Virus record (IMG/VR): IMGVR_UViG_3300034072_000758 | Span: 248,001-312,000 of that record | Strand: one strand, 5' to 3' | DNA length: 64,000 bases | The notes under the pieces: model-generated | Told to the model about the DNA's origin: nothing | What the model saw: the letters and a program-made list of their open reading frames with translations, nothing else | The model's database searches: none | Shown here: piece after piece, positions 7,143-49,935 of the stretch | How positions within the stretch are numbered: the stretch's first letter is position 1 | Layout: every line of letters starts with the position of its first letter | Position numbers and translations under genes: made by a program

Positions 7143-7150
7143 AATAAATA
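7143..7150 (+). promoter_or_regulatory. T4-like late promoter, 5 nt before ATG
   Basis: AATAAATA-TCCAC-ATG. Confidence 0.7.
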
Positions 7151-7155
7151 TCCAC

Positions 7156-7539
7156 ATGAGCAACTGGTATAGAAATTTGATCAACCTTCTCGAAGGCGCG
7201 GAACCATTGGTGCTTTATCACGGGACACACGCCAAGTTTGATGGTGTTCCGACCATTCCAGAAAGCGGTGCTGGTCTATATGGGCGCGGGGTTTATTTCT
7301 CGACCGATAAACGTGTTGCGCAAGGCCACGGTCCCACCATTGTCACTTGTACAGTGTCAGGAAAACTCGCCACCAATGCTCAATTGGATGCGGCTAGAGA
7401 ACAAGCATCAGAAGAAGGCTTTGTTAGATCGGAGAAGATGCATCGTGCCAGAGACATCCTTATCGATGCCGGGTATGTGGGTGTTCAGGATAAAGACCTT
7501 GTGGTGGTCTATGTTCAGGATGCTATGACGAGAGTTTAA
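7156..7539 (+). CDS. Leader-bearing ADP-ribosyltransferase-like protein
   Basis: MSNWYRNLINLLE leader; LYHGT...YGRGVYFSTD. Confidence 0.65.
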   Translation: MSNWYRNLINLLEGAEPLVLYHGTHAKFDGVPTIPESGAGLYGRGVYFSTDKRVAQGHGPTIVTCTVSGKLATNAQLDAAREQASEEGFVRSEKMHRARDILIDAGYVGVQDKDLVVVYVQDAMTRV

Positions 7540-7819
7540 GCGCATCTATCTTCGTTTGAAGCGTGGCAATCTCGTTTAGATCAATATCCACCGCTTCGAC
7601 CGAATAATACTGTTTCGATTGTTGAAATTTCGAAGCGAGGTCCAATGCTTCTCCTGCTACCAGTATAGCATCAGCTACCAAAGCGTCTGCTGCGTTTTGG
7701 ACGAAGTATTTGGATAGGATATGCGTAGTCGCATCAACCTCAGCCAGCCGGGTCGTATGATACGCCGTTAGGACTTGCTCTACGAGCTTGCGTAAATTGA
7801 GATTATTTTGATATGACAT
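7523..7819 (-). CDS. Hypothetical late protein
   Basis: TTTAAATA and AAGGA RBS upstream; N-terminus ...LRKLVE. Confidence 0.55.
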   Translation of the reverse strand: MSYQNNLNLRKLVEQVLTAYHTTRLAEVDATTHILSKYFVQNAADALVADAILVAGEALDLASKFQQSKQYYSVEAVDIDLNEIATLQTKIDALKLSS

Positions 7820-7839
7820 ACTATCCTTATATCGCATAT

Positions 7840-8331
7840 TTAAAATGTGTCAAGCCAATAGGGGGCGCGACGATTTTTCCAAAAATGAATGTGTGCTTTT
7901 TCATGTCGATAGAAAAAACGATAGCTATCAACGAAATTATCACCTCTATATTTTTCAGGCATACAAAGCGTTACAGACGTAAATGGAATGTCCGGTAAGC
8001 TATCTATCCATAAAGGGTTTTGTTCTGAGAACTGATGCCATTTTAAGAATGATTTATGAAATTTTGTTTCTGGGTGATTATAGCGGTAGCGCCATTCGTG
8101 GTGTAACGCATGAAGTAAATCTTGTAACCAAAGAGCATTGTAGCGAGATTGTCCTACCCATAACCGCGAAGGGTGGTTCCAGTGTGTTGGCTTCATAGGC
8201 GTCTCATACCCAAGAACATTTGCTGTTGTACACAAAAGTTGCGCATACTCGGAAATCATTTTTACCACATGCTTATCGACATGGTATTCTGCGCAAATTA
8301 CGGGATCGAGGTCTAAGGCAAATATATTCAT
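7840..8331 (-). CDS. Pyrimidine-dimer DNA glycosylase (DenV-like) family protein
   Basis: MNIFALD.DP..CAEYHVDKHVVKMISEYAQLL...THWNHP. Confidence 0.75.
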   Translation of the reverse strand: MNIFALDLDPVICAEYHVDKHVVKMISEYAQLLCTTANVLGYETPMKPTHWNHPSRLWVGQSRYNALWLQDLLHALHHEWRYRYNHPETKFHKSFLKWHQFSEQNPLWIDSLPDIPFTSVTLCMPEKYRGDNFVDSYRFFYRHEKAHIHFWKNRRAPYWLDTF

Positions 8332-8498
8332 AAAAAAACATTTAGCCATAGTGTTGGTTTAGTTCAATTTAAAACCGGATTGACCCATCGATGTTTTTCC
8401 ATATATTTTTTTAGCATTAAAAAAGACGCTGCCTACCATTTACTACTTTGTTCAATATGTTTCAAACCGCCGATGGGCTACGCCTAAGTAAAAAATAC

Positions 8499-10992: not shown

Positions 10993-11802
10993 ATGAGCAA
11001 TTGGTATCGAAATCTTGTAAATCTGATAGAAAGCGCTATAGACGAAGATGTATCTGACGGTTATTACCCGGCAACCGAACGTAACATAAAGCTTGCTAAA
11101 GCCTTTGTATTCGACAAATGGAAAGAGCGAGCCTATGAGCGCATGGGTGGTTTGGATAGCTATTCTCCGCCTACTGATTTAAGCAATTCCTGTAAATTCA
11201 CATCACAGTTTGTCAAGAATATTTTTGGCGGAACCATACAGGGAAACTTCGATCACCAGTATGTCGTCAAGGATGGTGCTATCATCGATTTGAATATCGA
11301 TGCTAAGGATGTCAAGACATTGGGCGATAAAGCTCATGTCCATGATCCTAAGTTCTTTGGAAAGCGTGACCACAAAGCTTCCATGAAAAGCTGCGAACCA
11401 AGAGTAGCCGCATGGACCCAAGAGTTTCTGTCCAAGTACGGTTCGAAGCTCGATAAAAAGCCTATTTACGAACAAGTTATAGAGCCTATTACGGTCTATC
11501 ATGTTACGCCAAAACGTAATTTGAAATCGATCAAATCCAACGGCTTAACTCCACAAATCGGAGATAATAGCACCCGTCTTGGAGAGACCGAAGAAGCCAT
11601 TCATGTATTTTATAATTTGGACGATCTTGAGGATGCGCTTTCGAATTGGGATTTGTTTGACGAAGATGAAGAACTTGTTTGCTTGAAGATAACAGTACCA
11701 AAAAACGAAGTAAAAGACGATCCGGCGTATCCTAATTCTGTAGGATTGATAAAAACGGTTGTTCCGCCACAGAATATAAAGAAGATGAATATAGAGCTAT
11801 GA
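10993..11802 (+). CDS. Leader-bearing protein: papain/transglutaminase-like domain plus ART-like domain
   Basis: MSNWYRNLVNLIE; NSCKF...DHQYV...IIDL; VYHVTPKRNLKSIKSNGLTP. Confidence 0.6.
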   Translation: MSNWYRNLVNLIESAIDEDVSDGYYPATERNIKLAKAFVFDKWKERAYERMGGLDSYSPPTDLSNSCKFTSQFVKNIFGGTIQGNFDHQYVVKDGAIIDLNIDAKDVKTLGDKAHVHDPKFFGKRDHKASMKSCEPRVAAWTQEFLSKYGSKLDKKPIYEQVIEPITVYHVTPKRNLKSIKSNGLTPQIGDNSTRLGETEEAIHVFYNLDDLEDALSNWDLFDEDEELVCLKITVPKNEVKDDPAYPNSVGLIKTVVPPQNIKKMNIEL

Positions 11803-12914
11803 GTAATTGGTACAGAGAAATTGTAAATCTACTGGAAGGTATCGGAGATATTCGACCGCACATTGAAACGATTGAGAAACAATATGGGGTATCCATAAAA
11901 TACACTATAGACAACAACGTATTTCGTTTAGAAAACATAGATCGAACAACTGGCACCAAAGGCAATGGAAGTCTCGCTTTATCCAAGTTGATCGAACTTA
12001 CTAATGAATATGGATTTAATATTACGCTAACGGTGGATAAAGGTCATCCAAATCTTGTCAAATTTTATCTGGATCATGGGTTTGTCCCTGCCGATCATCC
12101 AACCGACATAAAAGCGTGGTTCAATAAACATCAAAGAGACTGGTATTATGCTGACGAATATGAGCCAGAAGATGAAGATGATGAGCGACCAGAATTACCT
12201 TGGGTGAATATGATACATTACGCCGGTCAAGGAATAAGGTCTCCAAACACCATAATATCAGAAGATTTTAACATAGATGACTATACGTCTCTTGGGTTGG
12301 ATGCGACCAAAGCCGAACCATTCATGAAGGCCGGGTTTTCTCCCAAGGCCGCTAGAATGTATCTTGAAGTCAATGCTACGGTTGATGACGCGATGAGAGA
12401 TCGAGAGTTCGGCGAAAGACGTAGAGCCAAAGAAGAAGCCGAACAAAAAATGCTCGCCAACATCGAAAAAGTTGCGAAGAAGAATACGCCTATCACTTAT
12501 AACGAGGCTTGTGCGATCATCGCAGCCGATGATGATTTGTTCGATTTGGTACGCGGTTGGACTTGGAATGCTGACTATGCTGAGTACGACCAACCGGAAG
12601 ACGCTGCCCGCTTTCTTGCGGTGTTGAAGCGTATGAAGCCGGTTAAGAAGCATCTGTTTCGTGGCCAGATGCCATTTGGTGACCATGATAGCCATACGCG
12701 CGGCTTTCACTCATGGTCGGCCAATCGTCAGACTGCTGAAATTTTCGCCGAACGTAATGGTGTAGTTCTGGAAATTAATCGTCCGATCCAAGGAGTCGCA
12801 TTGAGCGATGTCCTTGATCTGCGCATGAAGCTCAGACCGGGTGAAAGCCATTATGGCGGACCACAAGCTGAATGGTTTGTTGTGGACCAGCCTGAGCAAT
12901 TTAAAAAATATTGA
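11799..12914 (+). CDS. Leader-bearing protein: GNAT-like domain plus R-S-E type ART-like domain
   Basis: MSNWYREIVNLLE; KGNGSLAL...LVKFYLDHGF; LFRG...HSWS...QAEWFV. Confidence 0.6.
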   Translation: MSNWYREIVNLLEGIGDIRPHIETIEKQYGVSIKYTIDNNVFRLENIDRTTGTKGNGSLALSKLIELTNEYGFNITLTVDKGHPNLVKFYLDHGFVPADHPTDIKAWFNKHQRDWYYADEYEPEDEDDERPELPWVNMIHYAGQGIRSPNTIISEDFNIDDYTSLGLDATKAEPFMKAGFSPKAARMYLEVNATVDDAMRDREFGERRRAKEEAEQKMLANIEKVAKKNTPITYNEACAIIAADDDLFDLVRGWTWNADYAEYDQPEDAARFLAVLKRMKPVKKHLFRGQMPFGDHDSHTRGFHSWSANRQTAEIFAERNGVVLEINRPIQGVALSDVLDLRMKLRPGESHYGGPQAEWFVVDQPEQFKKY

Positions 12915-13058: not shown

Positions 13059-13847
13059 TTACCAATCACCCTCATATGAAGGGTCGATGTAAAGCGGATC
13101 GATCATCACAATCTGTCCATTAGAACGCATCATTAGGTTATGTGGGGTAACATCTGCGTGTGGCTCCCAATTCGAAATGAATTTGGAGAGCTTGGCCAAA
13201 TCAGGATCACCGGCAATCGCGTCCTTATCCCTCCACGGTGCCGAATCAATCTGTTCCATCTTCTCACAAAATTCAACAGCCTTGTCAGTAGGGCAAGGAA
13301 CTAAGGTCTCAAGCCTAACCGCTTTAAAGATGCTATTAATTCGCAATGGGTTCCCTTTTATCTTCGGGACATACTTGTTACCCTTGTTGGATAACATGAA
13401 ATGAACAAACTCATCGTAACCCTGATCGTTGCGATACACTTTCAGAACATATGAATATGCCGGATGACTGAACACCGCTCCGTTGATACCCGATCCAATA
13501 AGGTCGAAGCCATAGTTCTTCATTGTCTTAACGAGGCTACGTTTCCATGCCGGGTTTTTTCTAGCCGCTTGTTGATGCACGTTTTTATCAATTTTAGGGT
13601 CATTAAACGATGATTTGAAATTTCGGTAATCATCGAGCGGACCTTCTTCAAGTTTAGAAATGCGTGGCTTGAAAAGCTTCTGGTCACCCTTATTGGTCTT
13701 CAATACTGGCTGGTTGTGTTCATCCTTATCGAACCCTTTGACAACAGCCTTGCGGTTCTTGAATTTACCCACGAGAACTTCATCGCCGACTTCGATGTCT
13801 GGTAATTCAAGTGTCTCTTTACTTTCAAGGATTTCACGATAGCGCAT
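13059..13847 (-). CDS. Leader-bearing protein kinase-like protein
   Basis: MRYREILE; IGSGINGAVF...VLKVY...ADVTPHNLMM...MIDP. Confidence 0.7.
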   Translation of the reverse strand: MRYREILESKETLELPDIEVGDEVLVGKFKNRKAVVKGFDKDEHNQPVLKTNKGDQKLFKPRISKLEEGPLDDYRNFKSSFNDPKIDKNVHQQAARKNPAWKRSLVKTMKNYGFDLIGSGINGAVFSHPAYSYVLKVYRNDQGYDEFVHFMLSNKGNKYVPKIKGNPLRINSIFKAVRLETLVPCPTDKAVEFCEKMEQIDSAPWRDKDAIAGDPDLAKLSKFISNWEPHADVTPHNLMMRSNGQIVMIDPLYIDPSYEGDW

Positions 13848-13856: not shown

Positions 13857-14234
13857 TTACCAGTTCTTACAGGACCAGTAATTAGCCTTCCACTTTGGGC
13901 CGGGATCGGTATCGCAATGATGTCTTGCTCTATATGATTTTCTGTGTTCGGGATAACGCTTCTTGATCGTCATATCGGGGTCACCGAAATTGACTTTTAC
14001 AACATTATCCTTGTCGTTCTTCACATAGACAGAAAACTTCTTAGGGCCATCTGGGGTTCTGAATGGTTTGTTCAGTGTAACTTCGCGCCCTTGGTATTCA
14101 GCTTCGGTCAGAGTTTCAGACATTTCTACCCAGCCGTATTTTTCAAAGAAATCGTCACCGTGAAGGGTTTCTTCGCAATTTTCACGGTCGTGAGACTCGA
14201 TAAGATTGATTATATTTCGATACCAGTGTGTCAT
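13857..14234 (-). CDS. Leader-bearing phage protein of unknown function
   Basis: GTTAAATA-TAATC-ATG; MTHWYRNIINLIE; KVNFGDP...YRARHHCD...YWSCKNW. Confidence 0.7.
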   Translation of the reverse strand: MTHWYRNIINLIESHDRENCEETLHGDDFFEKYGWVEMSETLTEAEYQGREVTLNKPFRTPDGPKKFSVYVKNDKDNVVKVNFGDPDMTIKKRYPEHRKSYRARHHCDTDPGPKWKANYWSCKNW

Positions 14235-14251: not shown

Positions 14252-14878
14252 TTAATAAGCTTCATCTTTGAATGTGTAATCAAGAAGATTTATATGAGCA
14301 TTTGGTTTCAGACGAACTTCTTGTTCTTCTTCGTATGCCGGATCAGCGTTCATACCCAATGTGGCGACCCAATCGACTTCGTTTTCATCAACCTCGCCTT
14401 TCAGAACTACAATAACCGGATCAGAGATATGCTCGCGGCCCTGCCAGTAAGCTTCTGCCGAATGTTCTTCCCATGTCCAATATATACCTAAGTGACGAGA
14501 GTTCGGCTTCCACCCGCGAGGGACGGCCATCGCGCGATAGAGAATAATCTTGCCATTTTTTATACGCGAGGCGAGTTCATATTCAACCTCCGCATATCGT
14601 CCACGAACGTATTCAGAAAACCAGTTTTTAAATTCCTCAGTGGTATGGTCTACTTCACTACCATTATTTTTTGTAAAGTCCTTGAAAAAATCATCTTCTA
14701 TATCTTCCGAATCGTCTTCGATACCCATGTCTTCGCGGTATTCATCTTCGACCCGTTCACCCGTACCACTACTCCAATCAATATGATCGTAAGTAAATTC
14801 TACGACAGCATCATGAATATCAGTTGGAATCGAAGCACGTTCCATAAGATTAACAAGATTTCTATACCAGTGTGTCAT
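14252..14878 (-). CDS. Leader-bearing ART-like protein
   Basis: MTHWYRNLVNLME; LYRAM...GIYWT...EEEQEVRL. Confidence 0.6.
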   Translation of the reverse strand: MTHWYRNLVNLMERASIPTDIHDAVVEFTYDHIDWSSGTGERVEDEYREDMGIEDDSEDIEDDFFKDFTKNNGSEVDHTTEEFKNWFSEYVRGRYAEVEYELASRIKNGKIILYRAMAVPRGWKPNSRHLGIYWTWEEHSAEAYWQGREHISDPVIVVLKGEVDENEVDWVATLGMNADPAYEEEQEVRLKPNAHINLLDYTFKDEAY

Positions 14879-14900: not shown

Positions 14901-15272
14901 ATGCGCGAATACATGACTATCCTAAACGAAATCTACCAAGAGCCGAAAGACTCTTCGTTCACACATGAGGGGGCGCAATATGATCTGAATGCCATCCTCA
15001 AAGCAACGAAGGATAATGAGACCGTTGATGTTGAGATCGCCGATTTGATCTGGGTATTCAAGTACGATCCGATGACCGAGGAAGATGCCGACCGAATATT
15101 CGGTTCCGACTTGGAAGCACCAATCCTGATCACCGTCGAAACCGAGGATGACCAAGAAAAAGTTGTTGTCTTGGATGGAGAGCACCGCCTAGCAAAAGCT
15201 GTGCTCTCAGGTCGAGCCACGTTACCAGCCGTCAAAGTTGATAGAGAATTTCTTTCGAAATTCAAAATTTAA
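14901..15272 (+). CDS. Leader-bearing ParB/Srx-like protein
   Basis: MREYMTILNE; PILI...VLDGEHRLAKA. Confidence 0.7.
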   Translation: MREYMTILNEIYQEPKDSSFTHEGAQYDLNAILKATKDNETVDVEIADLIWVFKYDPMTEEDADRIFGSDLEAPILITVETEDDQEKVVVLDGEHRLAKAVLSGRATLPAVKVDREFLSKFKI

Positions 15273-15664: not shown

Positions 15665-16573
15665 ATGCGTTTATATGAAATAATGGCAAATTGGCAAATA
15701 GAAGAACAATACGCTTATGGTGATTGTGATATACTTGCTATAGGTTTACATATAAAATTGAAGTTACCACTCAGAGCCGTGGTCGATGGTGACAAGTATT
15801 CGCATGTTTGGGTATCCCCATCACCCAATACCGCACTTGATATATGGGGAGAGCGCCCAGAAAAAGAAATATATCAAGCTTGGATCGCAGAAGATGATCA
15901 AGGTGGCGAAATTAAAACCGTCTCCCTCGAATGGCTGATGGCACATTTACCAGCCAAACAAAAAGAAAATCTAAATCAGCGAGTGAAAAAATCGTTAGAA
16001 GATTTTAAAATAGTTCACCCGAACAGTAGGTTGATTGAATCTTTCGGAAAAGTATTTAACTTTGATCCACAATTAGGCGACAAAACCCTGTTCGATCTGG
16101 ATGTTAAGGCTCGAAATGGCAGCTTAACACAAGACGACTTGAAATCTTTCAGAGCATTATTGAACCGCGATAAAAACGCATTTGTTCGTATGTATCATGG
16201 CACATCAAGCTCACATGACGTTCTGGGAAAAGGATTACTACCAACCTCACCAAATCGCTCTAAAAGCCTCCAAAGTGCCGCAGGATATGTTTATGTAGCA
16301 TATGATCCGAGGATGGCGTTAGCGTTCGCACGACACGCTTACCCATCTGATAATGAATTTACCGTTTATGCCGTGGATGTGACGATAGCTCGTTTATTAC
16401 CAGACCACGATCAATTACGAAACAAACGACATTTCGCCGGTATAGAAGTGGGAGACAGTCTTGTCGATTCATTAATCTTTGGTGGTGGAGCAAGAGTTAA
16501 GGGAAAGATCAGTCCGATGCAAATTCATATCTACGGTAAATTTGATAAGAGCGGTAAAGAGATTGATTTTTGA
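15665..16573 (+). CDS. Leader-bearing protein: papain-like domain plus ART-like domain
   Basis: AATAAATA-TCAT-ATG; MRLYE; YGDCDILAIGL...HVWV...ALDIWG; RLIE linker; MYHGT...GLLP...YVYVA. Confidence 0.6.
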   Translation: MRLYEIMANWQIEEQYAYGDCDILAIGLHIKLKLPLRAVVDGDKYSHVWVSPSPNTALDIWGERPEKEIYQAWIAEDDQGGEIKTVSLEWLMAHLPAKQKENLNQRVKKSLEDFKIVHPNSRLIESFGKVFNFDPQLGDKTLFDLDVKARNGSLTQDDLKSFRALLNRDKNAFVRMYHGTSSSHDVLGKGLLPTSPNRSKSLQSAAGYVYVAYDPRMALAFARHAYPSDNEFTVYAVDVTIARLLPDHDQLRNKRHFAGIEVGDSLVDSLIFGGGARVKGKISPMQIHIYGKFDKSGKEIDF

Positions 16574-30578: not shown

Positions 30579-31724
30579 ATGCGTTTACTTGAGTTAAAAC
30601 ATTCCGAACAAACTGTTGTACTGTATAGAGGCGACAATAAGCGTATCGATGTGTTTGATATTGAACAAACCGATATTAAGGCTCTGTTCGGAAAAGGTAT
30701 CTATTTGACTGATAGCAAAGTAGTCGCAAAGGATTACGCAAAGAAAGGCATTAATGTATTCTTCGAGGGTGATTACCCTTCTAAGAGTAAGAAAAGTCTA
30801 CTTAACAAATACTTGTTCAAAGTCATGATGGAAGAACTTAACCTTAAAGAAAAGGTCTACATGGCGACAAACAAAAAATATGAGCCGGAATTTCCGCGAT
30901 CTGGTCCTGAGCGGGTTCAAGCCATTGCTATGCTTAAGCTGGCAGTGAAGCACGTTGTTGCCGAGACGTTAGCTAAGGCCGTCACACTTTGGAATCAGCG
31001 TCGAAAGAATGTCAAGTTCCACACTGATACAACCGGGGCAGTCGTCATGATCGACAAGTCTGTTAAGGGGAGCGTATCTGAGTTCCACATTCCGACCGAT
31101 TATATGGCGCGTGTATTGGATGGCGAAGCACCCCTCCCAGACAAAGCTTTGAAGGTCGTTCGAGACACATTCGATGCCTTCCGTAGAAGCAAAGGTGGAT
31201 CAATCGAAGATGCTTTAGATTTTAGAAGTGTTGCGCACAAAGATAGCTTGGTCACTAAACATCTGAACTTCGATCAGTTCATAAAATACTATAAATCGCA
31301 TGGTTCCGAATATGCTTGGAGTGATGATGATGTGCGTGGTGGTGATAATCAGAACCCATCATTTGACTTCATCTTCAATGGTCAACACGCCGGGGAAATT
31401 TTAAAGATCAAAGAATTTCAGGATCATTTGATCGCGGGTCTCATGACTATTGGATATGTCGGTTTCAAATATGATGGTGGTATCCGCGCTGGGGGTGCTC
31501 TGGCTCGTGGCGGTGGTGGTTTGCGTCACACAGCGTATTCATTCTGGAACGCAGAATATATCAACGCACATCGCGTCAATGATGAAGAACCAGAAGACGC
31601 AAGAAACTATAATCCAAAGGTTACCGTTGACGATTATGAATTTGCGATTAACAGTGCTGTGGGCGAATCTGTCGAGATCGCCGAGACGTTCGATACGTCG
31701 CTTGATGTAAAATACAGAGGGTAA
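30579..31724 (+). CDS. Leader-bearing ART-like (polyvalent-protein type) protein
   Basis: AATAAATA-AATTC-ATG; MRLLE; LYRG...F...LFGKGIYLTDS..VA..YA; GYVGFKY. Confidence 0.65.
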   Translation: MRLLELKHSEQTVVLYRGDNKRIDVFDIEQTDIKALFGKGIYLTDSKVVAKDYAKKGINVFFEGDYPSKSKKSLLNKYLFKVMMEELNLKEKVYMATNKKYEPEFPRSGPERVQAIAMLKLAVKHVVAETLAKAVTLWNQRRKNVKFHTDTTGAVVMIDKSVKGSVSEFHIPTDYMARVLDGEAPLPDKALKVVRDTFDAFRRSKGGSIEDALDFRSVAHKDSLVTKHLNFDQFIKYYKSHGSEYAWSDDDVRGGDNQNPSFDFIFNGQHAGEILKIKEFQDHLIAGLMTIGYVGFKYDGGIRAGGALARGGGGLRHTAYSFWNAEYINAHRVNDEEPEDARNYNPKVTVDDYEFAINSAVGESVEIAETFDTSLDVKYRG

Positions 31725-35554: not shown

Positions 35555-36202
35555 ATGCGTTATCACGAAATACTTAGAGAAAGCCGAGAAGCATCTTTGT
35601 ATCATGGCTATAAGAAGCCGGAACATGCTCGCATGGCTCTTGAGGCTAACGAAATGTTGGGGACAACTACTCAGCGCTGGTGGCCTAACGGGGTTGAACT
35701 CGTCCCCGAAGATGACCCTAAGTACCGCGAATCATACTGGATGAAGGGTATCTCGTTGACCCGCGATCTTAGCTACGCAGCGCATTGGGGAGACATTATT
35801 TTTGAACTCGATCAGCGCGCATTGTCTTACAATTATAAGATCATACCATTCAACTGGATGCGAGGTCGAGCACAGAAATATTCAGTCAATGATACGCAAA
35901 GCGACGTAGCTCACTTTAGAAAGGGTGAGCGCGAAGAGTTTCTGATCCTTGAAAAGGGACCAAATAATTACATGTTTCCGAAAGACCCTGAGTTCGATGA
36001 TTACCCGGAGTATGAACCGCGTTTAGACCTCAAGGCTTTTAAGACCCCAGCTAACAAAAAGCTGGCTCCATTGTCTCGCTACTTAAAAGCAATTTATGTC
36101 GAGCCGTATTTCATGAACAAATATCCCGAAACATATGACTATCAGTATTTTATTGATCATCCTAAATTCGGTGGATTTAAGTCTTTCCCGCGCAGAAAAT
36201 AA
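35555..36202 (+). CDS. Leader-bearing ART-like protein
   Basis: AATAAATA-CACCT-ATG; MRYHEILRE; LYHG...GISLTRD...EREE. Confidence 0.6.
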   Translation: MRYHEILRESREASLYHGYKKPEHARMALEANEMLGTTTQRWWPNGVELVPEDDPKYRESYWMKGISLTRDLSYAAHWGDIIFELDQRALSYNYKIIPFNWMRGRAQKYSVNDTQSDVAHFRKGEREEFLILEKGPNNYMFPKDPEFDDYPEYEPRLDLKAFKTPANKKLAPLSRYLKAIYVEPYFMNKYPETYDYQYFIDHPKFGGFKSFPRRK

Positions 36203-43548: not shown

Positions 43549-43839
43549 ATGAGAGACATCCTAAACAAACTGAGCGGCTTAACCGAAAGTGAATCCTTGA
43601 CGCACGAGGATAAGAAATACGTATGCTATACGGAAGATAGCAACGGCAATCAGCTATCTCAATTTTATGGCGATGCTATCAACGATCTTCTCAAAGAAGC
43701 CCTTCGTTCGGATGACTCTGTTCATGTTGTGACTATATTCCGCAATGAGAATAACGAACACGTTGCTACTTATACTCGCACGGACGCGCCAACTCTTCGT
43801 GGTGATGGCTGGGAACTGATTAAACAAAATATTGGTTGA
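43549..43839 (+). CDS. Leader-bearing small late protein
   Basis: CCTAAATA-TTCCC-ATG; MRDILNKLSGLTE. Confidence 0.65.
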   Translation: MRDILNKLSGLTESESLTHEDKKYVCYTEDSNGNQLSQFYGDAINDLLKEALRSDDSVHVVTIFRNENNEHVATYTRTDAPTLRGDGWELIKQNIG

Positions 43840-43886
43840 TTTCGTAGACTAAGCTTTCTATAGTCTTCCCACTATAGGAGTTCAGA

Positions 43887-44986: not shown

Positions 44987-45032
44987 CCCTTGCTTAATTC
45001 CAAAACGCTTGATTTAACAGAGGGTCTTGTGG

Positions 45033-45065
45033 TATAAATACTGTACGGCCCTTAAGGCCGTTTTT
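45033..45065 (+). promoter_or_regulatory. Late promoter TATAAATA followed by a short hairpin and T tract, upstream of the RF1-like gene
   Basis: TATAAATA 45033-45040; ACGGCC-CTTAA-GGCCGT-TTTT. Confidence 0.55.
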
Positions 45066-45078
45066 ATGGAGTATCACG

Positions 45079-45762: not shown

Positions 45763-46076
45763 GCGACACCCGGAGCGGGGTTCTTATCCCGCTCCATATT
45801 CGTTCGGATGCGCCCACGTAGAATGTTTTTGGCGTGAGTGAAATATATGGTTTCGTTCTCAGTAAAGAAGTCGAAAGAGACAATCTCTTTTATGAGAGAA
45901 TGGTACGCCCATTTCCGCACCAAATCGTCTTCGATCTTAGATATACCGACGATCATGTTACTGTAGTGGTTCACGAAGCTGGCGATTTTTCGCACCCGTA
46001 CATCATCGGGCGCTTTTACCAGCATGTCGGCCAGATTGATCGCGGCTTGAGAATTTCCGAAAGTCGTGGGGTTCAT
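45759..46076 (-). CDS. Hypothetical protein
   Basis: Operonic ORF. Confidence 0.55.
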   Translation of the reverse strand: MNPTTFGNSQAAINLADMLVKAPDDVRVRKIASFVNHYSNMIVGISKIEDDLVRKWAYHSLIKEIVSFDFFTENETIYFTHAKNILRGRIRTNMERDKNPAPGVA

Positions 46077-46675
46077 ACGTGTAACATTACCTTCATTAGG
46101 TCTTCTTCTAGTTTGGTCATGTCACCACAAACAATCAAGGGTGTGTTGACAATAATACCATGCGGGGGTGATTTGCCCCAGCGCCCGATGCTTCCGTTTT
46201 CGGTCTCAACATATAGAACTTTGATCGGGATTTTAGAACGATTTGATGTTTGATAATGACTATAACCGGAATCGCGGAAATGCCTATCCCATTCATTCTC
46301 GCGTTGTCTTTGCTTATATTCTTCGTCCACATAATGAGTACGAAAAGACGGTCCCTTAAAGCTAGGGCGTGTTTCTATCACCGCATTTCCTTCGCGGTCA
46401 TATGTATGTTTAATTGCGAAATCTGGGTAATCTTTGATATGGTCTTCGATCCGGCGCAGAAAAGTTTCAAATGTGGTGAAATCGAAAGAGATTTTCTTCG
46501 CATCGATCCACTGACCAAAACTTATGTACGAGTCCTCGTCAGATAAGGATTTGTGTCTATTATATTTGGCTTCTTCGGCCTCAAACCAGACGCTCGAACG
46601 TTCTTCTTCACGATCAATGCTGGCCGTGAACCAGATAGTCAATAAGACAGCAACAACCCCTAGTGCGATCCACAT
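46073..46675 (-). CDS. Membrane-anchored protein, C-terminal tail family
   Basis: N-terminal TM; ends LEEDLMKVMLHV. Confidence 0.65.
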   Translation of the reverse strand: MWIALGVVAVLLTIWFTASIDREEERSSVWFEAEEAKYNRHKSLSDEDSYISFGQWIDAKKISFDFTTFETFLRRIEDHIKDYPDFAIKHTYDREGNAVIETRPSFKGPSFRTHYVDEEYKQRQRENEWDRHFRDSGYSHYQTSNRSKIPIKVLYVETENGSIGRWGKSPPHGIIVNTPLIVCGDMTKLEEDLMKVMLHV

Positions 46676-47125
46676 TTACTTCAAAGCCGCTATTTCTCTG
46701 TAAACCAGTTCGATAGAACGAATATTTTCAAGAATTTCGTTCGTTGGCTTAAGCGCATGGGCGATACGGGCGGCTGTCTGAAAGATCATTTCTTCATTAG
46801 CCAGATCACCAGTACCATTCTCCTTACGAAGCAATTCACGAATTTCAGCCCAATCCGCGTCATAGCGGGATTGAATGGCATTCTTGGATGCTTCGTAAGT
46901 CGCCACTTCGGCGCGATAATTTAACAATTCCGTCTTGGCGTTTTCGAGTTCTTCGTCCGTGAAATTGGCGAGGCTCTTTGCCAGCAGTGGCGACGGGATA
47001 GGGGCAATCGGATTTGCCATGCGGGGGAAGAAATGGCCCGCATTCAGCTTGGCCCTCAGTGTCGTAGGTTCGGTGCGATCTTTGTGGTCGATCTCTACTT
47101 CGAAATTGAGGTAATCAGGATTCAT
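46676..47125 (-). CDS. Hypothetical protein
   Basis: AGGGG RBS. Confidence 0.65.
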   Translation of the reverse strand: MNPDYLNFEVEIDHKDRTEPTTLRAKLNAGHFFPRMANPIAPIPSPLLAKSLANFTDEELENAKTELLNYRAEVATYEASKNAIQSRYDADWAEIRELLRKENGTGDLANEEMIFQTAARIAHALKPTNEILENIRSIELVYREIAALK

Positions 47126-47146
47126 TACTCGCCCCTAAAATGACTT

Positions 47147-47194
47147 GTCCCGACTACATGGCTTTGGGGGGGGGGTGGACCATGTAGCCGGGAC
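47147..47194. repeat. 15-bp imperfect inverted repeat with a G10/C10 loop
   Basis: GTCCCGACTACATGG ... CCATGTAGCCGGGAC. Confidence 0.75.
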
Positions 47195-47303
47195 TTGCTC
47201 AACCAGAAAGGCGCTTACCCTCTGGGAGAAGCCTACTATGATAGATGGATGACTCCGTGTCAACACTTATTTTCAAACTTTTTGTGTTTGAATAAATATG
47301 TGT

Positions 47304-47837
47304 ATGATCGATTTAGAAAAGATACAGGAATCCCAACACCTTTTGGATGTTCTTCTACAGATGGAAGACGTTCTCGACTCGTTGGATTTGTACGTTTTTG
47401 AGAACTGGTATAATGGCGAGATCATTGATGGTCCGAACATCAAGAGATACTGGCTCGATTTCACGTTAAAATACGCATGGGACAAGCAACCAGACGATAA
47501 AGCTGCTTATCGTCTTATGAAACATGGTATTCGTGTATCCTTTGATAAGATGAGATATTCTAAGGGTAAGGAAGAACCGGAGATCGTTGAAGATGAAGAC
47601 GATGAAGAAAAGGTATTTCTTGCTGTAAAGATCAGTATACCTCGTATGCTTTGCGTACAAATTGCCGACGAAGAACTTGACTTCTACGATGAAGAAATTG
47701 ATGCGGAGGACGTTTCTGACGCTAAGGACTCTGACATCGAGAGTGAAGACGAATATTATGGAGACCAAGAAGGCGACGATGATATGAACGCCGACGCAGA
47801 AGGAGAGGCCCCAGATGACCAAGAAAAACCTCAGTGA
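47304..47837 (+). CDS. Acidic late protein of unknown function
   Basis: AATAAATA-TGTGT-ATG; LDSLDLYVFENW..GEII.GP...RYW. Confidence 0.75.
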   Translation: MIDLEKIQESQHLLDVLLQMEDVLDSLDLYVFENWYNGEIIDGPNIKRYWLDFTLKYAWDKQPDDKAAYRLMKHGIRVSFDKMRYSKGKEEPEIVEDEDDEEKVFLAVKISIPRMLCVQIADEELDFYDEEIDAEDVSDAKDSDIESEDEYYGDQEGDDDMNADAEGEAPDDQEKPQ

Positions 47838-49383
47838 GGGCCTAAGACGTGGTGATCTGGAAGACCAAGTTCTTCCTATGATCTCCTTCGATGAATATGA
47901 AAGCAACTTCGGCGACACCGCCCTGACTATCGCTTTTTATATTCATGGTAAGGACGCCGCGACCGACTTCAACAAATTTCTCCAAAAGTCTCACGTAAAC
48001 TTCCTCACGACCGATATTTCGCCATCGCAGGATAAGGACGGTTACTACGCTGTATTTGTCGAGTTCAAGATCGATGACAAGCTTATCGCCAACTTCTTTG
48101 ACATCATCGAAGAGGTAAATAACCTCACCCTGATCGAAGAATGGCAAATCCACTTGAATAACCGCGAACTCATGGCTCTCTCAAAAAAAGCCTTGGAGTT
48201 CTATATCCACGCCAAGTACGAGCGCGTGATCATGAAGGAAGATGTTCAAGAAGATACCAGCGTCGAACAAAAGGCCAAGGCATTCATTGTTAAAAATTTA
48301 GAACACCTCAGCAAGTATTATTCCCTACGTGATTTCAAGAGTGAAGACGCCGCGCGCGAGTTCTATTTTAACTCCTTGGAAAAGGACGATAAATCACCTT
48401 GGGTTCAAGCCATGCCAAGTAGTTTCCACGGTACTGAACTGAATAAGGCAATTAGTCTACTTGTGCCAATCTACAAGGCTGGTAAGAATTTCCGTATCGG
48501 CAAAGCTCCAAAGAAAGTTGCTAGAGACCCTTGGGCCGAAATTGATGTCACCACACCAAGCCTCGCGCCATTACAGTCTGTAGGCATTCTGAACCCATTC
48601 GACGGCTATAAAGTGAAGGGTGTGAAGATGCTCTCGATCAACGATATTAATATGACAGAAGACCATAGTTATACTACTGGTGGAGTCAAAAAAGTCGAAT
48701 GGTTGGCCGAGAAGATTAAAGAGAATGGGAAATTTACGGCCATTATCGTGAACCAAGATTATTCTATTTTGGACGGGCATCACCGTTTTAGAGCCATTCG
48801 TGATTATCTGCGTTACAAGACCATTCCCGCGCTGGTAATCGAAATCAATGACGGAACCAACGAAAGCTATCTGATCGAAGGCTCTGGGGAAGAAGTGACT
48901 TTTGAAAATGTTCACATTGATTTTCATCACGATCAACATGATTATGAATTACGTGCCATCATTCTGGGTAAAGTTGTTGGCTATATACGCTATGTCGTTT
49001 ATCAGGACGAAGTTCACCTCAGCATGATCAAGGTCCACGAGGATTACCGTCGCAAGGGAATAGCTACACAACTGGTGAAGCATCTACAAAAGATGTTCCC
49101 CAATACTGAAATACAAAAGGGTTCAATGACCGATGATGGTTCAAAGCTGTTTGGTGTCTTGCCAACTCATACTGTCGTTGATCCTAATTATGCGCCCAAG
49201 TTCAAGCGCCACGAAGAAGTCAAGAATATGTTAAAGAAATATTCCGATGACTTTGAGGCAATGTCGGATAAGTCAACCTTTATGGATACTCACTCGGATT
49301 GGAATGATCTCCACGACGAAAACGACAAGTTAGATCAAGAGCTTTACGGTAAAAAACCAACAAAAACAATATTTAAGGTGTAA
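47815..49383 (+). CDS. Multidomain late protein: N-terminal domain, ParB-like and GNAT
   Basis: MTKKNLSE; ILDGHHRFRA (ParB); IKVHEDYRRKGIATQL (GNAT). Confidence 0.75.
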   Translation: MTKKNLSEGLRRGDLEDQVLPMISFDEYESNFGDTALTIAFYIHGKDAATDFNKFLQKSHVNFLTTDISPSQDKDGYYAVFVEFKIDDKLIANFFDIIEEVNNLTLIEEWQIHLNNRELMALSKKALEFYIHAKYERVIMKEDVQEDTSVEQKAKAFIVKNLEHLSKYYSLRDFKSEDAAREFYFNSLEKDDKSPWVQAMPSSFHGTELNKAISLLVPIYKAGKNFRIGKAPKKVARDPWAEIDVTTPSLAPLQSVGILNPFDGYKVKGVKMLSINDINMTEDHSYTTGGVKKVEWLAEKIKENGKFTAIIVNQDYSILDGHHRFRAIRDYLRYKTIPALVIEINDGTNESYLIEGSGEEVTFENVHIDFHHDQHDYELRAIILGKVVGYIRYVVYQDEVHLSMIKVHEDYRRKGIATQLVKHLQKMFPNTEIQKGSMTDDGSKLFGVLPTHTVVDPNYAPKFKRHEEVKNMLKKYSDDFEAMSDKSTFMDTHSDWNDLHDENDKLDQELYGKKPTKTIFKV

Positions 49384-49386
49384 GAT

Positions 49387-49935
49387 ATGCGTTTATTTGA
49401 AATGTGCGGAGCATTCCATCAACCAGTTATCGATGAACTTAATCAAGTTCTGAGCGATACATTTGCGCTATATTTCAAGACGCATACTTATCACTGGAAT
49501 GTGGAAGGTATGTTCTTCCACTCTCTTCACGATCTTTTCGGTAAACAATATACCGAAATGTGGGAATCAATTGACGAGATTGCTGAACAAATTCGCCAAC
49601 TAGGTGCCAAGCCAGCTACCGCGATGAAAGACATGATGCCTACCGTTATCACGAACGGTCGTCCAGACATGAGCGCCAAGGATATGATCATCGATTTGCG
49701 AAATGGCCATAGCTTGATCATTGATCGTTTAAGAGAAGCTATACGCATTGCTCAAAACAACGGTGACGAAGGCACAGCCGATCTCTTCATTCAACGCATC
49801 AAGGCCCATCAAAAGCATATGTGGATGCTGGCTTCCAGTGCCAAGGAGATTATTGATTCCCCGGCTCCGGTAGAAGATGCCGTTCGATCCGACATCAGCG
49901 TTGCTTCCGTGCTTATTTCGGTTTCACGAGATTAA
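49387..49935 (+). CDS. dps: Dps/ferritin-like protein with MRLFE leader
   Basis: LYFKTHTYHWNVEG..F.SLH.LF..QY...DEIAE.IR.LG...D.GTADL...HQKHMWML. Confidence 0.9.
   Translation: MRLFEMCGAFHQPVIDELNQVLSDTFALYFKTHTYHWNVEGMFFHSLHDLFGKQYTEMWESIDEIAEQIRQLGAKPATAMKDMMPTVITNGRPDMSAKDMIIDLRNGHSLIIDRLREAIRIAQNNGDEGTADLFIQRIKAHQKHMWMLASSAKEIIDSPAPVEDAVRSDISVASVLISVSRD

What the first reader, a model, noticed from the sequence alone, without database searches (positions are those of the whole stretch)
7143..49935. Dispersed family of late genes with capsid-targeting-like leaders: candidate virion-packaged effector payload
Seen in the sequence: unrelated proteins share short N-terminal leaders ending in [IL]-x-E. 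These are MSNWYRNLINLLE (7156), MSNWYRNLVNLIE (10993), MSNWYREIVNLLE (11799), MTHWYRNIINLIE (14234-), MTHWYRNLVNLME (14878-), MRYREILE (13847-), MRYHEILRE (35555), MREYMTILNE (14901), MRLYE (15665), MRLLE (30579), MRLFE (49387), MRDILNKLSGLTE (43549), and more loosely MTKKNLSE (47815) and ...LRKLVE (7819-). Most follow a TAAATA late promoter, and what comes after the leader is enzymatic cargo (ART-like, kinase, GNAT, papain-like, ParB, Dps). Established: T4 internal proteins carry a roughly 10-residue capsid-targeting sequence removed by prohead protease gp21 at I/L-x-E, and T4 Alt is a packaged, injected ADP-ribosyltransferase. Inference: this phage has a portable late-promoter plus leader cassette that loads a large, swappable set of host-modifying enzymes into the head for injection.
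Basis: partly seen in the sequence, partly recalled or inferred. Interest (0 to 1): 0.92.

Follow-up and report, generated by a model that had tools for sequence, protein, structure and literature searches.

The report
Head-targeting leader peptides on phage enzymes
A half-megabase phage puts short shared N-terminal tags, written directly behind late promoters, on many unrelated enzyme-like proteins; in a cultured relative the same kind of tag marks proteins found in the virus particle, so these are probably enzymes packed into the head for delivery into the next host cell.

Summary
Five window genes share a 13-residue leader (MSNWYRNL[IV]NL[ILM]E type), conserved as peptide while codons differ; a sixth copy lies elsewhere on the same 516,805-bp contig.

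TAAATA-N5-ATG occurs 11 times against 0.81 expected. These genes have no Shine-Dalgarno site, and 11 of 12 carry [LI]-x-E within residues 4-14, against 16 of 98 other genes.

The window encodes a T4 gp55-type late sigma factor.

Two uncultivated relatives (46% and 60% GC) have the same promoter-ATG-leader arrangement. Orthologous cargo carries different leader variants, so the variants look interchangeable.

The strongest test was in the cultured relative Atu_ph07. There, 22 of 24 annotated proteins starting M-[RK]-[WYFLI]...[LI]-x-E are in the published virion mass-spectrometry table; the baseline is about 19% (p = 8e-15).

Homologues of three window genes (47304, 47815, 14901) are mass-spectrometry virion proteins in Atu_ph07 or PA5oct.

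Best reading: T4-style capsid-targeting propeptides, in a jumbo-phage clade where they had not been described. Not shown: cleavage, packaging and injection in this phage, and its prohead protease. It is a new variant of a known kind.

The parts
7156..7539 (+). Leader gene: MSNWYRNLINLLE, then a 127-aa ADP-ribosyltransferase-like cargo. TAAATA at 7145-7150, 5 nt before the ATG; no Shine-Dalgarno site.
   Evidence: Pfam ART-PolyVal E = 2.5e-5, below the curated cut-off.
10993..11802 (+). Leader gene: MSNWYRNLVNLIE, 269 aa, orphan cargo. TATAAATA ends at 10987, 5 nt before the ATG.
   Evidence: Residues 166-268 resemble hypothetical proteins of SPO1-like Bacillus phages. Very weak Tpt1/KptA hit, E = 0.07.
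11799..12914 (+). Leader gene: MSNWYREIVNLLE, 371 aa. Its start overlaps the stop of 10993; variant box AATATA. Two-module protein.
   Evidence: Residues 151-368 are 51% identical (E = 2e-73) to a 225-aa protein of relative L103 that starts MRWTEIFE.
13857..14234 (-). Leader gene: MTHWYRNIINLIE, 125 aa. TAAATA at 14240-14245 (- strand), 5 nt before the ATG.
   Evidence: phrog_7595 E = 6e-14 aligns only residues 40-125, so the family elsewhere lacks the leader.
14252..14878 (-). Leader gene: MTHWYRNLVNLME, 208 aa, orphan cargo. TATAAATA 5 nt before the ATG. Its promoter overlaps, as a palindrome, the promoter of 14901.
14901..15272 (+). Leader gene: MREYMTILNE, 123 aa. TATAAATA 5 nt before the ATG.
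   Evidence: phrog_17560 E = 4e-18 aligns from residue 10. The homologue is the C-terminal half of PA5oct EST35_0140, annotated 'structural protein, ESI-MS/MS', which itself starts MRFIE.
13059..13847 (-). Leader gene: MRYREILE, 262 aa, kinase-like cargo. Variant box AAAATA 5 nt before the ATG.
   Evidence: phrog_15752 (T7 gp0.7-type protein kinase) E = 6e-11 over residues 100-164.
15665..16573 (+). Leader gene: MRLYE, 302 aa, orphan cargo. TAAATA 4 nt before the ATG.
   Evidence: No family hit.
30579..31724 (+). Leader gene: MRLLELKHSE, 381 aa, ADP-ribosyltransferase-like cargo (LYRGD motif). TAAATA 5 nt before the ATG.
   Evidence: ART-PolyVal E = 5e-5, below cut-off. Orthologues start MRYTDLFE and MREFINLLE.
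35555..36202 (+). Leader gene: MRYHEILRE, 215 aa, with an LYHG motif after the leader. TAAATA 5 nt before the ATG.
   Evidence: No family hit.
43549..43839 (+). Leader gene: MRDILNKLSGLTE, 96 aa. TAAATA 5 nt before the ATG.
47304..47837 (+). First gene of an apparent late operon; TAAATA 5 nt before the ATG. Conserved virion protein, homologue of Atu_ph07 gp306.
   Evidence: phrog_12928 'virion structural protein' E = 8e-32. Synteny with Atu_ph07 gp306/gp305. gp306 is in the virion mass-spectrometry table.
47815..49383 (+). Conserved virion-protein N-terminal domain (residues 1-233) fused to ParB_N and GNAT. N-terminus MTKKNLSE followed by GL.
   Evidence: phrog_13138 E = 1e-27. Pfam GNAT E = 6e-10 and ParB_N 28.9 bits, above cut-off. 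The Atu_ph07 gp305 homologue starts MKIVE followed by GL and is in the virion mass-spectrometry table.
49387..49935 (+). Ferritin/Dps-like protein starting MRLFE, with its own Shine-Dalgarno site. Third gene of the 47304 operon.
   Evidence: Pfam Ferritin E = 2e-29, domain starting at residue 15. Upstream sequence.
7523..7819 (-). 98-aa protein starting MSYQNNLNLRKLVE. TAAATA at 7837-7842, then a Shine-Dalgarno site (AAGGA) before the ATG.
6899..7108 (-). 69-aa Cys-rich protein with TAAATA-N5-ATG but no [LI]-x-E leader. Shows that the promoter-ATG fusion is not restricted to leader genes.
59850..60638 (-). T4 gp55-type late sigma factor, the protein expected to read the TATAAATA-type promoters. 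It lies about 1.8 kb beyond the SbcD gene (57032-58048).
   Evidence: phrog_12791 'sigma factor for late transcription' E = 6e-76; phrog_234 E = 7e-18. In Atu_ph07 the sigma gene sits directly next to SbcD (PMC6102473).

Best explanation
The short N-terminal leaders are capsid-targeting propeptides of the T4 type.

Proposed mechanism:
1. The phage's gp55-type sigma factor transcribes these genes late from (T)ATAAATA boxes.
2. In this lineage the box is often placed so that the ATG is at or next to the transcription start. That would give leaderless or nearly leaderless mRNAs.
3. The first 5-14 residues have an aromatic or aliphatic residue near position 3-5 and end in [LI]-x-E. They bind the protein to the scaffolding core of the assembling prohead.
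4. The gp21-family prohead protease then cuts after the Glu and releases the mature enzyme inside the head.
5. The cargo is rich in ADP-ribosyltransferase-like domains. It also includes a kinase-like protein, ParB/GNAT and a Dps-like protein. It travels with the DNA and is available at the very start of the next infection.

Shown here:
- The leader class exists and is statistically tied to the promoter.
- Conservation is at the peptide level.
- The late sigma factor is present.
- The cassette is conserved in relatives.
- Leader variants swap on orthologous cargo.
- Proteins with this leader format are virion proteins in Atu_ph07 and PA5oct.

Inferred:
- Leaderless transcription.
- Targeting, cleavage, head-internal location and injection for the proteins of this phage.
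For: (1) Five window genes and one more on the same contig share a 13-residue leader with synonymous codon differences. Their mature parts show no BLASTP similarity.

(2) TAAATA-N5-ATG: 11 against 0.81 expected. None of the 12 such genes has a Shine-Dalgarno site. 11 of 12 carry [LI]-x-E at residues 4-14, against 16 of 98 other genes; p = 3e-7.

(3) A gp55-type late sigma factor is at 59850-60638. ATAAATA precedes structural genes in the related jumbo phages CBB and GAP32 (PMC5259590). T4 late promoters are an 8-bp TATA box about one helical turn upstream of the start site (PMC2988020).

(4) Relatives:
- A 46%-GC contig (L104/L112) has ATAAATA-N5-ATG before MRYTDLFE and ATAAATA-N4-ATG before MLLNELF. 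It also has a protein starting MSNWYRDVVNLME.
- A 60%-GC contig (L103/L113) has only 5-6 TAAATA sites per 20 kb. Three of them sit 4 nt before the ATG of genes starting MRWTEIFE, MREFINLLE and MLSMRELMLMVE.

(5) Leader swapping on orthologues:
- 30579 (MRLLE...) against P0004 (MRYTDLFE) and P0005 (MREFINLLE), 36-41% identity.
- The 11799 C-terminal domain is 51% identical to an L103 protein that starts MRWTEIFE.

(6) Atu_ph07, genome-wide:
- 24 annotated proteins start M-[RK]-[WYFLI]...[LI]-x-E. 22 of them are in the published virion ESI-MS/MS table, which lists 131 of about 681 proteins. Odds ratio 55, p = 7.6e-15; at least 11 independent families.
- gp205 (MDFRQIRALLE followed by G) and gp206 (MSIRKFLNIINE followed by S) are encoded directly after the prohead protease gp204. 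Both are in the virion.
- gp381 (MKWQDLSE followed by GIKVYHGS) is a weak ART-PolyVal match. gp53 carries a zeta-toxin-type kinase domain.

(7) Homologues of 47304 and 47815 (Atu_ph07 gp306 and gp305) and of 14901 (PA5oct EST35_0140, which starts MRFIE) are mass-spectrometry virion proteins.

(8) T4 itself:
- ipII and ipIII share a 10-residue leader with Tyr4, Phe7, Ile8 and Glu10.
- The review PMC9026906 assigns targeting to residues 4 and 7 and processing to residues 8 and 10. It also reports short N-terminal propeptides on Alt and gp24.
- Major capsid proteins of this clade keep L-x-E-G at residues 16-19 and L-x-E at residues 56-58.

(9) Group 2 jumbo phages all have the S77 (gp21) prohead peptidase (PMC7824862).
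Against: - There are no virion data for this phage.
- Its prohead protease and capsid genes were not retrieved, so a T4-type cleavage specificity is inferred from clade membership.
- No N-terminal peptide data show removal of the leader in any relative.
- Virion mass-spectrometry lists of jumbo phages contain contaminants. For example, SbcC is flagged ESI-MS/MS in PA5oct.
- In the short MRLxE leaders the residue after the Glu is hydrophobic rather than small.
- For 47304 the N-terminal I-Q-E is not conserved in the Atu_ph07 homologue.
- One gene with the promoter-ATG fusion has no leader (7108-).
- The 13-residue leader itself was found in only one other contig.
- The transcription start was not mapped.
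- Most cargo functions are weakly supported or unknown.
Confidence: 0.66

Rival explanations
1. The leaders mark virion proteins and may be processed, but the proteins are ordinary structural or decoration parts (tail, fibres, head surface). They would not be head-internal cargo injected into the host.
For: The Atu_ph07 mass-spectrometry table does not say where in the particle a protein sits. 47304 and 47815 belong to families conserved across the whole clade and annotated simply as virion structural proteins. These phages have elaborate hairy virions (PMC7824862).
Against: The cargo includes enzyme-like domains with no obvious structural role: ART-PolyVal-like, T7 gp0.7-like kinase, GNAT, ParB_N, ferritin, and a zeta-type kinase in Atu_ph07 gp53. 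The two clearest Atu_ph07 examples are encoded right after the prohead protease. The leader format matches T4 head-core proteins.
Confidence: 0.12
2. The shared N-terminal codons are a requirement of translating leaderless late mRNAs, acting as a 5' coding-region initiation signal. They would not be a protein-sorting signal.
For: The leaders are strongly associated with genes whose ATG lies 4-5 nt after the promoter box and which lack a Shine-Dalgarno site.
Against: The same leaders occur on genes that have Shine-Dalgarno sites or are translationally coupled: 11799, 49387, 7819-, the MSNWYRD gene of L104, and essentially all Atu_ph07 examples. Codons vary synonymously while the peptide is kept. 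One leaderless-type gene has no such leader (7108-). The motif predicts virion presence in Atu_ph07, where the genes have normal 5' leaders.
Confidence: 0.06
3. The leader is a different protein-level signal. It could be a tag for a phage or host chaperone or protease that times activity or keeps dangerous enzymes inactive until needed. It could also be a docking helix for a common partner, unrelated to the capsid.
For: The leaders look like short amphipathic helices. These phages encode ClpX/ClpA/Lon-type ATPases. No direct packaging evidence exists for this phage.
Against: This does not explain why 22 of 24 Atu_ph07 proteins with the motif are in purified virions. It does not explain why head-module proteins next to the protease carry the motif. 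It does not explain why the leader ends in the T4 gp21 cleavage motif.
Confidence: 0.1
4. Chance plus paralogy: the long leader marks one recently duplicated family, and the short 'MRLxE'-type matches are coincidences.
For: [LI]-x-E near an N-terminus occurs in about 10-16% of proteins by chance. Some listed cases are loose (47304, 47815, 7819-).
Against: No similarity is detectable beyond the leader. The association with the promoter class gives p = 3e-7, and remains at 8 of 9 after collapsing the long-leader family. The cassette is conserved in 46%- and 60%-GC relatives. Leader variants swap on orthologues.
Confidence: 0.03

Closest known systems
T4 internal proteins (IPI, IPII, IPIII) and their capsid targeting sequence
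   Same: - A roughly 10-residue N-terminal leader is shared by otherwise unrelated proteins.
- It has an aromatic residue near position 4 and a hydrophobic residue three positions on, and ends in [IL]-x-E (PMC9026906).
- T-even phages carry a variable set of internal proteins in which only the leader is conserved (PMC3012670).
- The MRY...IL.E leaders here resemble the T4 leader in sequence pattern.
   Different: - The phage is a 0.5-Mb member of a different clade (jumbo group 2.2, about 40% identity to Atu_ph07 and PA5oct in SbcC).
- There are several leader variants, including a 13-residue form.
- Many more carriers exist (at least 14 in 64 kb), and they are larger and enzyme-like rather than small basic proteins.
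- The genes are scattered rather than sitting at one or two loci.
- The promoter is fused to the ATG.
- Function is untested.
T4 Alt, a packaged ADP-ribosyltransferase
   Same: A late-made enzyme with a short N-terminal propeptide removed by gp21. It is carried in the head and injected to modify host RNA polymerase (PMC9026906; PMC9503650). Several cargos here look like ADP-ribosyltransferases.
   Different: No detectable sequence relationship to Alt was found. The matches here are to ART-PolyVal and fall below the curated cut-off. Targets are unknown.
Polyvalent proteins and MuF/portal-fused effectors (Iyer, Burroughs, Aravind and co-workers)
   Same: They predict that phages pack ADP-ribosyltransferase, GNAT, ParB, Nudix and similar domains into the head for early action (PMC7824862; PMC9503650). 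ART-PolyVal is the Pfam family hit here.
   Different: In those cases the effectors are carried by fusion to a large structural protein or to each other. Here most are separate small proteins, each with its own short leader. Only 47815 is a fusion to a conserved virion domain.
Ejection proteins of phiKZ-like phages (phiKZ, 201phi2-1, SPN3US)
   Same: Many head-internal proteins are processed by a gp21-related protease after Glu and ejected into the host (PMC5694885, PMC10052503 and PMC9026906).
   Different: It is a different jumbo group. The cleavage motif has small residues at P3 (from my own knowledge of that literature, not tested here), the propeptides are usually long, and no short portable leader has been described.
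Mobile promoter cassettes of T4-type phages (promoter-early stem-loops; Arbiol et al. 2010, recalled from memory)
   Same: Short conserved regulatory sequences at gene starts are proposed to drive modular gene shuffling.
   Different: Those are early promoters with a stem-loop and carry no coding leader. Recombination at the cassette described here was not tested.

Membership tests
T4-type capsid targeting sequence / internal protein system | Short N-terminal leader shared by proteins that are otherwise unrelated | tested here: met
   six copies of a 13-residue leader and several shorter variants; no similarity beyond the leader.
T4-type capsid targeting sequence / internal protein system | Leader ends in the gp21 cleavage motif [LI]-x-E | tested here: met
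   11 of 12 genes of the promoter class against 16 of 98 others. The same holds in relatives.
T4-type capsid targeting sequence / internal protein system | Phage encodes an S77 (gp21) prohead protease and a gp23-type capsid | tested here: inconclusive
The feature is present in Atu_ph07, pEa_SNUABM_47 and hundreds of related contigs, and is stated for all group 2 jumbo phages in PMC7824862.
T4-type capsid targeting sequence / internal protein system | Carriers are physically present in purified virions | not testable with these tools
   There are no data for this phage. By proxy, 22 of 24 motif-bearing Atu_ph07 proteins are in the virion mass-spectrometry table. Homologues of 47304, 47815 and 14901 are mass-spectrometry virion proteins.
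T4-type capsid targeting sequence / internal protein system | Leader is removed in the mature particle | not testable with these tools
   This needs N-terminal or semi-tryptic peptide data.
T4-type capsid targeting sequence / internal protein system | Leader alone suffices to pack a foreign protein | not testable with these tools
   Shown for T4 (PMC9026906). It needs a bench test here.
gp55-dependent late promoter | TATAAATA-type box upstream of late genes, and a gp55-family sigma factor in the genome | tested here: met
   Box. Sigma factor at 59850-60638. Late timing itself was not measured.
Leaderless mRNA | Transcript starts at or within a few nucleotides of the AUG; no Shine-Dalgarno site | tested here: inconclusive
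   No Shine-Dalgarno site in 12 of 12 genes, and a fixed 4-5 nt spacing from the box. The spacing matches the T4 box-to-start distance (PMC2988020). The 5' ends were not mapped.
ART-PolyVal (PF18760) ADP-ribosyltransferases | Score above the Pfam gathering threshold (31.2 bits) | tested here: not met
   7156 scores 25.5 bits, 30579 scores 24.5 bits, L104 2020 scores 30.5 bits and Atu_ph07 gp381 scores 21.7 bits. The hits are consistent in position, at the N-terminal start of the domain, but all are sub-threshold. A structure model of 30579 was too poor to test the fold.

The most novel reading that the evidence does not exclude
A compact, portable cassette turns any downstream ORF into head-packaged cargo. 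It consists of a late TATAAATA box, an AUG at the transcription start, and a 5-14-residue targeting/cleavage leader. The cassette has spread through a lineage of 0.3-0.5-Mb phages.

If so, the simple rule 'starts M-[RKS]-x-aromatic...[LI]-x-E behind a late box' reads out the injected effector repertoire of hundreds of uncultivated jumbo phages. The repertoire would include expanded ADP-ribosyltransferase-like families.

Internal [LI]-x-E junctions, as at residues 153-155 of the 11799 protein, may release several cargos from one precursor.
Probability: 0.4. Interest if true: 0.8.

Novelty: new variant of a known kind. Interest (0 to 1): 0.66.

Why it matters
Phages that inject ready-made enzymes can act on the host before any phage gene is expressed. 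That is where anti-defence and takeover functions are expected. In T4 the short leader that loads such proteins into the head is well studied and is already used to pack foreign proteins.

If the same principle operates in the very large Atu_ph07, PA5oct and Rak2-related phages, most of whose genes are unannotated, three things follow:
- A sequence rule would pick out their packaged proteins.
- Some of the many function-unknown proteins in their virion proteomes would be explained.
- A set of ADP-ribosyltransferase-like and kinase-like candidates for early host modification would be identified.

The promoter fused to the start codon would also be a compact case of late, probably leaderless, gene expression in a phage of Gram-negative hosts.

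Tried and rejected
**Searches for the 13-residue leader elsewhere**
- As a degenerate DNA pattern, IMG/VR returned only the source contig.
- The metagenome and genome collections returned only short chance ORFs.
- A relative carrying it (L104) turned up only through an orthologue of 30579.

**Region-limited protein search**
- A search with residues 1-40 of the 10993 protein found only the protein itself. The tool is not sensitive to a 13-residue match.

**Attempts to fetch the prohead protease and capsid genes of the source contig**
- A capsid-protein alignment found more than 600 related contigs and kept the best 80. The source contig was not among them.
- An anchor search with the phage's arginyl-tRNA synthetase found no close relative, but it did give the window's position on the contig, 248001-312000.

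**Other dead ends**
- A 'spread' listing of capsid homologues did not surface Atu_ph07.
- Structure prediction failed: 30579 with a 4-sequence alignment gave mean pLDDT 53, and 10993 alone gave 33. Neither was good enough for fold comparison, so no fold search was run.
- Nucleotide searches of the region against sequenced phages found nothing.
- The 'papain-like' cargo was not supported in Pfam or PHROGs for any listed protein.

**Considered and rejected**
- That the leader is part of a common fold: rejected and by PHROG families that align only after the leader.
- That the DNA rather than the peptide is conserved: rejected.

Full report
**Source and setting.** The window is positions 248001-312000 of IMGVR_UViG_3300034072_000758, a 516,805-bp viral contig.
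- No sequenced phage matches it at the DNA level.
- Its SbcC protein is about 40% identical to those of Sinorhizobium phage Phosso, Agrobacterium phage Atu_ph07 and Pseudomonas phage PA5oct. That places it among the 'group 2.2' jumbo phages.
- According to PMC7824862, these phages have gp23-type capsids, gp20 portals, S77 (gp21) prohead peptidases and their own sigma factors, but no RNA polymerase.
- The window holds mostly accessory and replication genes. Examples are an arginyl-tRNA synthetase, a helicase, SbcCD and a ferritin-like protein.

**Check of the observation.**
- Every N-terminus in the finding translates as written.
- A degenerate pattern for the long leader hits exactly the five stated genes and none of 100 shuffles. 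A sixth copy, a 93-aa protein, lies elsewhere on the contig.
- The copies differ at synonymous codon positions while keeping M-[ST]-[NH]-W-Y-R-[NE]-[LI]-[IV]-N-L-[LIM]-E. Selection therefore acts on the peptide.
- With the first 16 residues removed, no pair among 17 leader proteins reaches BLASTP E < 0.05.

**The promoter class.**
- TAAATA-N5-ATG occurs 11 times against 0.81 expected, with 0 of 100 shuffles as high. TAAATA alone is at chance level.
- In a simple 110-gene map, most genes have a GGAG-type ribosome-binding site. The 12 genes with [TA]AAATA 4-5 nt before the ATG have none (0 of 12 against 51 of 98).
- Eleven of these 12 have [LI]-x-E ending at residue 4-14, against 16 of 98 other genes. 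The background is 10% in internal windows. Fisher p = 3e-7. Counting the long-leader family once still leaves 8 of 9.
- The link is not absolute in either direction. The 69-aa gene at 7108- has the fused promoter but no leader. 11799, 47815, 49387 and 7819- have leaders but normal or coupled translation starts.

**Is the box a late promoter?**
- The window encodes a 262-aa protein that matches the PHROG 'sigma factor for late transcription' at E = 6e-76, and the T4 gp55 family at E = 7e-18. It lies about 1.8 kb beyond the SbcD gene; in Atu_ph07 the sigma gene sits directly next to SbcD (PMC6102473).
- In the related phages CBB and GAP32, ATAAATA precedes structural genes and was proposed as the late promoter (PMC5259590).
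- T4 late promoters are an 8-bp TATA box about one helical turn upstream of the start site (PMC2988020). With a 5-nt spacer the A of the ATG falls at or next to the start.
- Leaderless transcripts are therefore a reasonable inference. They are not a result: no 5' ends were mapped.

**Cargo.**
- Supported:
  - 47815 has GNAT and ParB_N domains.
  - 49387 is ferritin/Dps-like, with the domain starting at residue 15.
  - 13847- matches the T7 gp0.7-type kinase PHROG.
  - The homologues of 14901 include proteins annotated as partitioning proteins.
- Weak but recurrent:
  - ART-PolyVal matches occur at the very start of the mature part of 7156 and 30579.
  - The same match occurs in a leader gene of relative L104 and in Atu_ph07 gp381. 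All are below the curated cut-off.
  - Motifs of the LYHG or LYRG kind follow the leader in 7156, 35555, 30579, a seventh-class gene just upstream of the window (L099, MRYEELLE) and the C-terminal domain of 11799.
  - Reading these as ADP-ribosyltransferase signatures is my inference.
- Unknown: 10993, 14878-, 15665 and 43549.
- 'Papain-like' found no support.
- PHROG families for 14234- and 14901 align only after the leader, so the same domains exist elsewhere without it.

**Relatives with the same cassette.** Orthologues of 30579 led to two uncultivated relatives.
- A 46%-GC contig from an NCBI assembly (L104/L112) has ATAAATA-N5-ATG in front of the orthologue, which starts MRYTDLFE. It has ATAAATA-N4-ATG in front of another ADP-ribosyltransferase-like gene (MLLNELF). 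It also has a 131-aa protein starting MSNWYRDVVNLME, here with a Shine-Dalgarno site.
- A 60%-GC contig (L103/L113) has only 5-6 TAAATA sites in 20 kb. Three of them lie 4 nt before the ATG of genes starting MRWTEIFE, MREFINLLE and MLSMRELMLMVE.
- The MRWTEIFE protein is 51% identical (E = 2e-73) to residues 151-368 of the 11799 protein, whose own leader is MSNWYREIVNLLE.
- Orthologous cargo thus carries MRLLE, MRYTDLFE, MREFINLLE, MRWTEIFE or the 13-residue leader.

**Test against real virions.** Atu_ph07 has a published virion ESI-MS/MS list of 131 proteins (PMC6102473).
- I fetched 488 kb of its 490-kb genome.
- I listed every ORF start matching M-[RK]-[WYFLI]-(0-8 residues)-[LI]-x-E.
- I mapped the hits by eye to annotated gene starts.
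- Twenty-four annotated proteins match. Twenty-two are in the virion list: gp43, 47, 53-63, 196, 199, 381, 408, 482, 487, 548, 561 and 672. Two are not: gp51 and gp419.
- Against 131 of about 681 overall, this gives an odds ratio of 55 and p = 7.6e-15.
- gp53-63 and gp408 are paralogues. Even so, at least 11 independent families remain.
- gp205 (MDFRQIRALLE followed by G) and gp206 (MSIRKFLNIINE followed by S) sit immediately after the prohead protease gene gp204. They are detected with 10 and 6 unique peptides, and their leaders resemble the long leader of the window.
- gp381 starts MKWQDLSE followed by GIKVYHGS and is a weak ART-PolyVal match. gp53 contains a zeta-toxin-type kinase domain.
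- The Atu_ph07 paper does not mention N-terminal leaders or these paralogues.
- In Atu_ph07 the box usually lies about 27 nt upstream and is followed by a Shine-Dalgarno site. The fusion to the ATG is therefore a lineage feature, while the late box and the leader are shared.

**Direct homologues of window genes.**
- 47304 and the first 233 residues of 47815 match PHROGs annotated 'virion structural protein' (E = 8e-32 and 1e-27).
- They are syntenic with Atu_ph07 gp306 and gp305, both in the virion list.
- The junction [IL]-x-E followed by G-L is conserved between 47815 and gp305.
- The 14901 cargo corresponds to the C-terminal half of PA5oct EST35_0140. That protein is annotated 'structural protein, ESI-MS/MS', starts MRFIE followed by G, and has TAAATA 3 nt before its ATG.

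**Comparison with T4.**
- Read from the T4 record, ipII and ipIII share a 10-residue leader with Tyr4, Phe7, Ile8 and Glu10.
- Mutational work summarised in PMC9026906 assigns targeting to positions 4 and 7 and processing to positions 8 and 10. It shows that the leader alone packs foreign proteins. It also notes short propeptides on Alt and on capsid proteins.
- T4 gp24, gp22 and gp67 also begin with [LI]-x-E within ten residues.
- T-even internal proteins are described as a highly diverse set with only the leader conserved (PMC3012670).
- The MRY...IL.E leaders here fit that pattern closely. The 13-residue form keeps an aromatic pair, a hydrophobic run and L-x-E.
- Capsid proteins of the clade keep L-x-E-G at residues 16-19, as does T4 gp23.

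**Mechanism, and what is shown.**
- Shown: a non-random class of leaders; peptide-level selection; linkage to a T4-type late box; the sigma factor; conservation and swapping in relatives; virion presence of proteins with this format in two cultured relatives.
- Inferred: the leaders bind cargo to the prohead core, the gp21-type protease removes them after Glu, the proteins lie inside the head and enter the host with the DNA, and the mRNAs are leaderless.
- The late timing gives one functional argument. Enzymes that look like host-takeover functions (ADP-ribosyltransferase, gp0.7-like kinase) only make sense as late products if they are carried into the next cell, as T4 Alt is.

**Rivals.**
- A purely translational role for the conserved codons is contradicted by leaders on Shine-Dalgarno-bearing genes, by synonymous variation and by the Atu_ph07 result.
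- A role as a structural-protein signal without injection cannot be excluded.
- A different sorting or degradation signal does not explain the virion enrichment.
- Chance or paralogy is excluded by the counts.

**Limits.**
- The head module of this phage was not retrieved.
- Structure predictions were too poor to use.
- Virion lists of jumbo phages contain some contaminants.
- The mapping of motif hits to Atu_ph07 genes was done by eye from annotation tables.
- The denominator of 681 coding genes is 714 features minus about 33 tRNAs.

**Verdict.** It extends a known T4 principle to a distant clade of very large phages, with new leader variants, a much larger and ADP-ribosyltransferase-rich cargo set, and a promoter-start-codon fusion. 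I found no paper describing this for these phages in the library searched. I rate it a new variant of a known kind, with interest about 0.66.

Noticed in passing
window 14878-14901: Two leader genes are transcribed divergently from overlapping boxes. The 22 nt between the two start codons contain the near-palindrome TATTTATAAATA, so one short AT-rich element serves both strands.
   Followed up: partly
window 11799-12914 (residues 151-156 of the product): The 11799 protein is a two-module fusion. Its C-terminal 218 residues equal a whole 225-aa protein in relative L103. The L103 leader aligns with an internal T-I-I-S-E-D stretch here. This could be an internal cleavage site that releases two cargos from one precursor.
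   Followed up: partly
L099 5368-6072 (- strand), about 580 nt upstream of the window start: Another cassette gene lies just outside the window: ATAAATA-N5-ATG, leader MRYEELLE, 235 aa, with a YYHGT motif after the leader. No Pfam hit.
   Followed up: partly
window 47293-49935: An apparent late operon. A leaderless-type conserved virion protein is followed by a virion-domain-ParB_N-GNAT fusion and then a ferritin/Dps-like protein. The later genes have their own ribosome-binding sites. A Dps-like protein co-expressed with head proteins is unusual.
   Followed up: partly
window 3254-5035, and L103 8139-9716: A phage-encoded arginyl-tRNA synthetase. In the 60%-GC relative it lies two genes before the ADP-ribosyltransferase-like leader gene. 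The 46%-GC relative has a class I tRNA synthetase (cysteinyl-type Pfam hit) next to its copy.
   Followed up: no
Atu_ph07 39484-51377 (L015/L235), gp53-gp64: A tandem array of paralogous virion proteins of about 250 aa. The ten from gp53 to gp62 start M-[RK]-W-x-x-L-x-E, and gp63 starts MRLFQLLE. Several have a YRG motif about 40 residues in. gp53 additionally carries a zeta-toxin-type kinase domain. The genome paper does not remark on this.
   Followed up: partly
Atu_ph07 record 315248-315526 (- strand): An unannotated 92-codon ORF starts MRLFDLFE, between gp428 and gp429. It may be a missed gene of the leader class.
   Followed up: no
Atu_ph07 record 463635-464249 (gp676): RefSeq annotates a second 'head maturation protease' far from the head module, in addition to gp204. 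I did not check whether it is a true S77 paralogue.
   Followed up: no
L004 1118-1591: Next to the sixth long-leader gene lies a 157-aa protein whose N-terminus looks like a twin-arginine export signal (SRRSLLGAA...).
   Followed up: no
window 61957-63201 and 24193-25170: From their N-termini alone, these look like a nicotinate/nicotinamide phosphoribosyltransferase and an NAD-dependent sugar epimerase. NAD salvage next to many ADP-ribosyltransferase-like genes would fit, but neither gene was searched.
   Followed up: no
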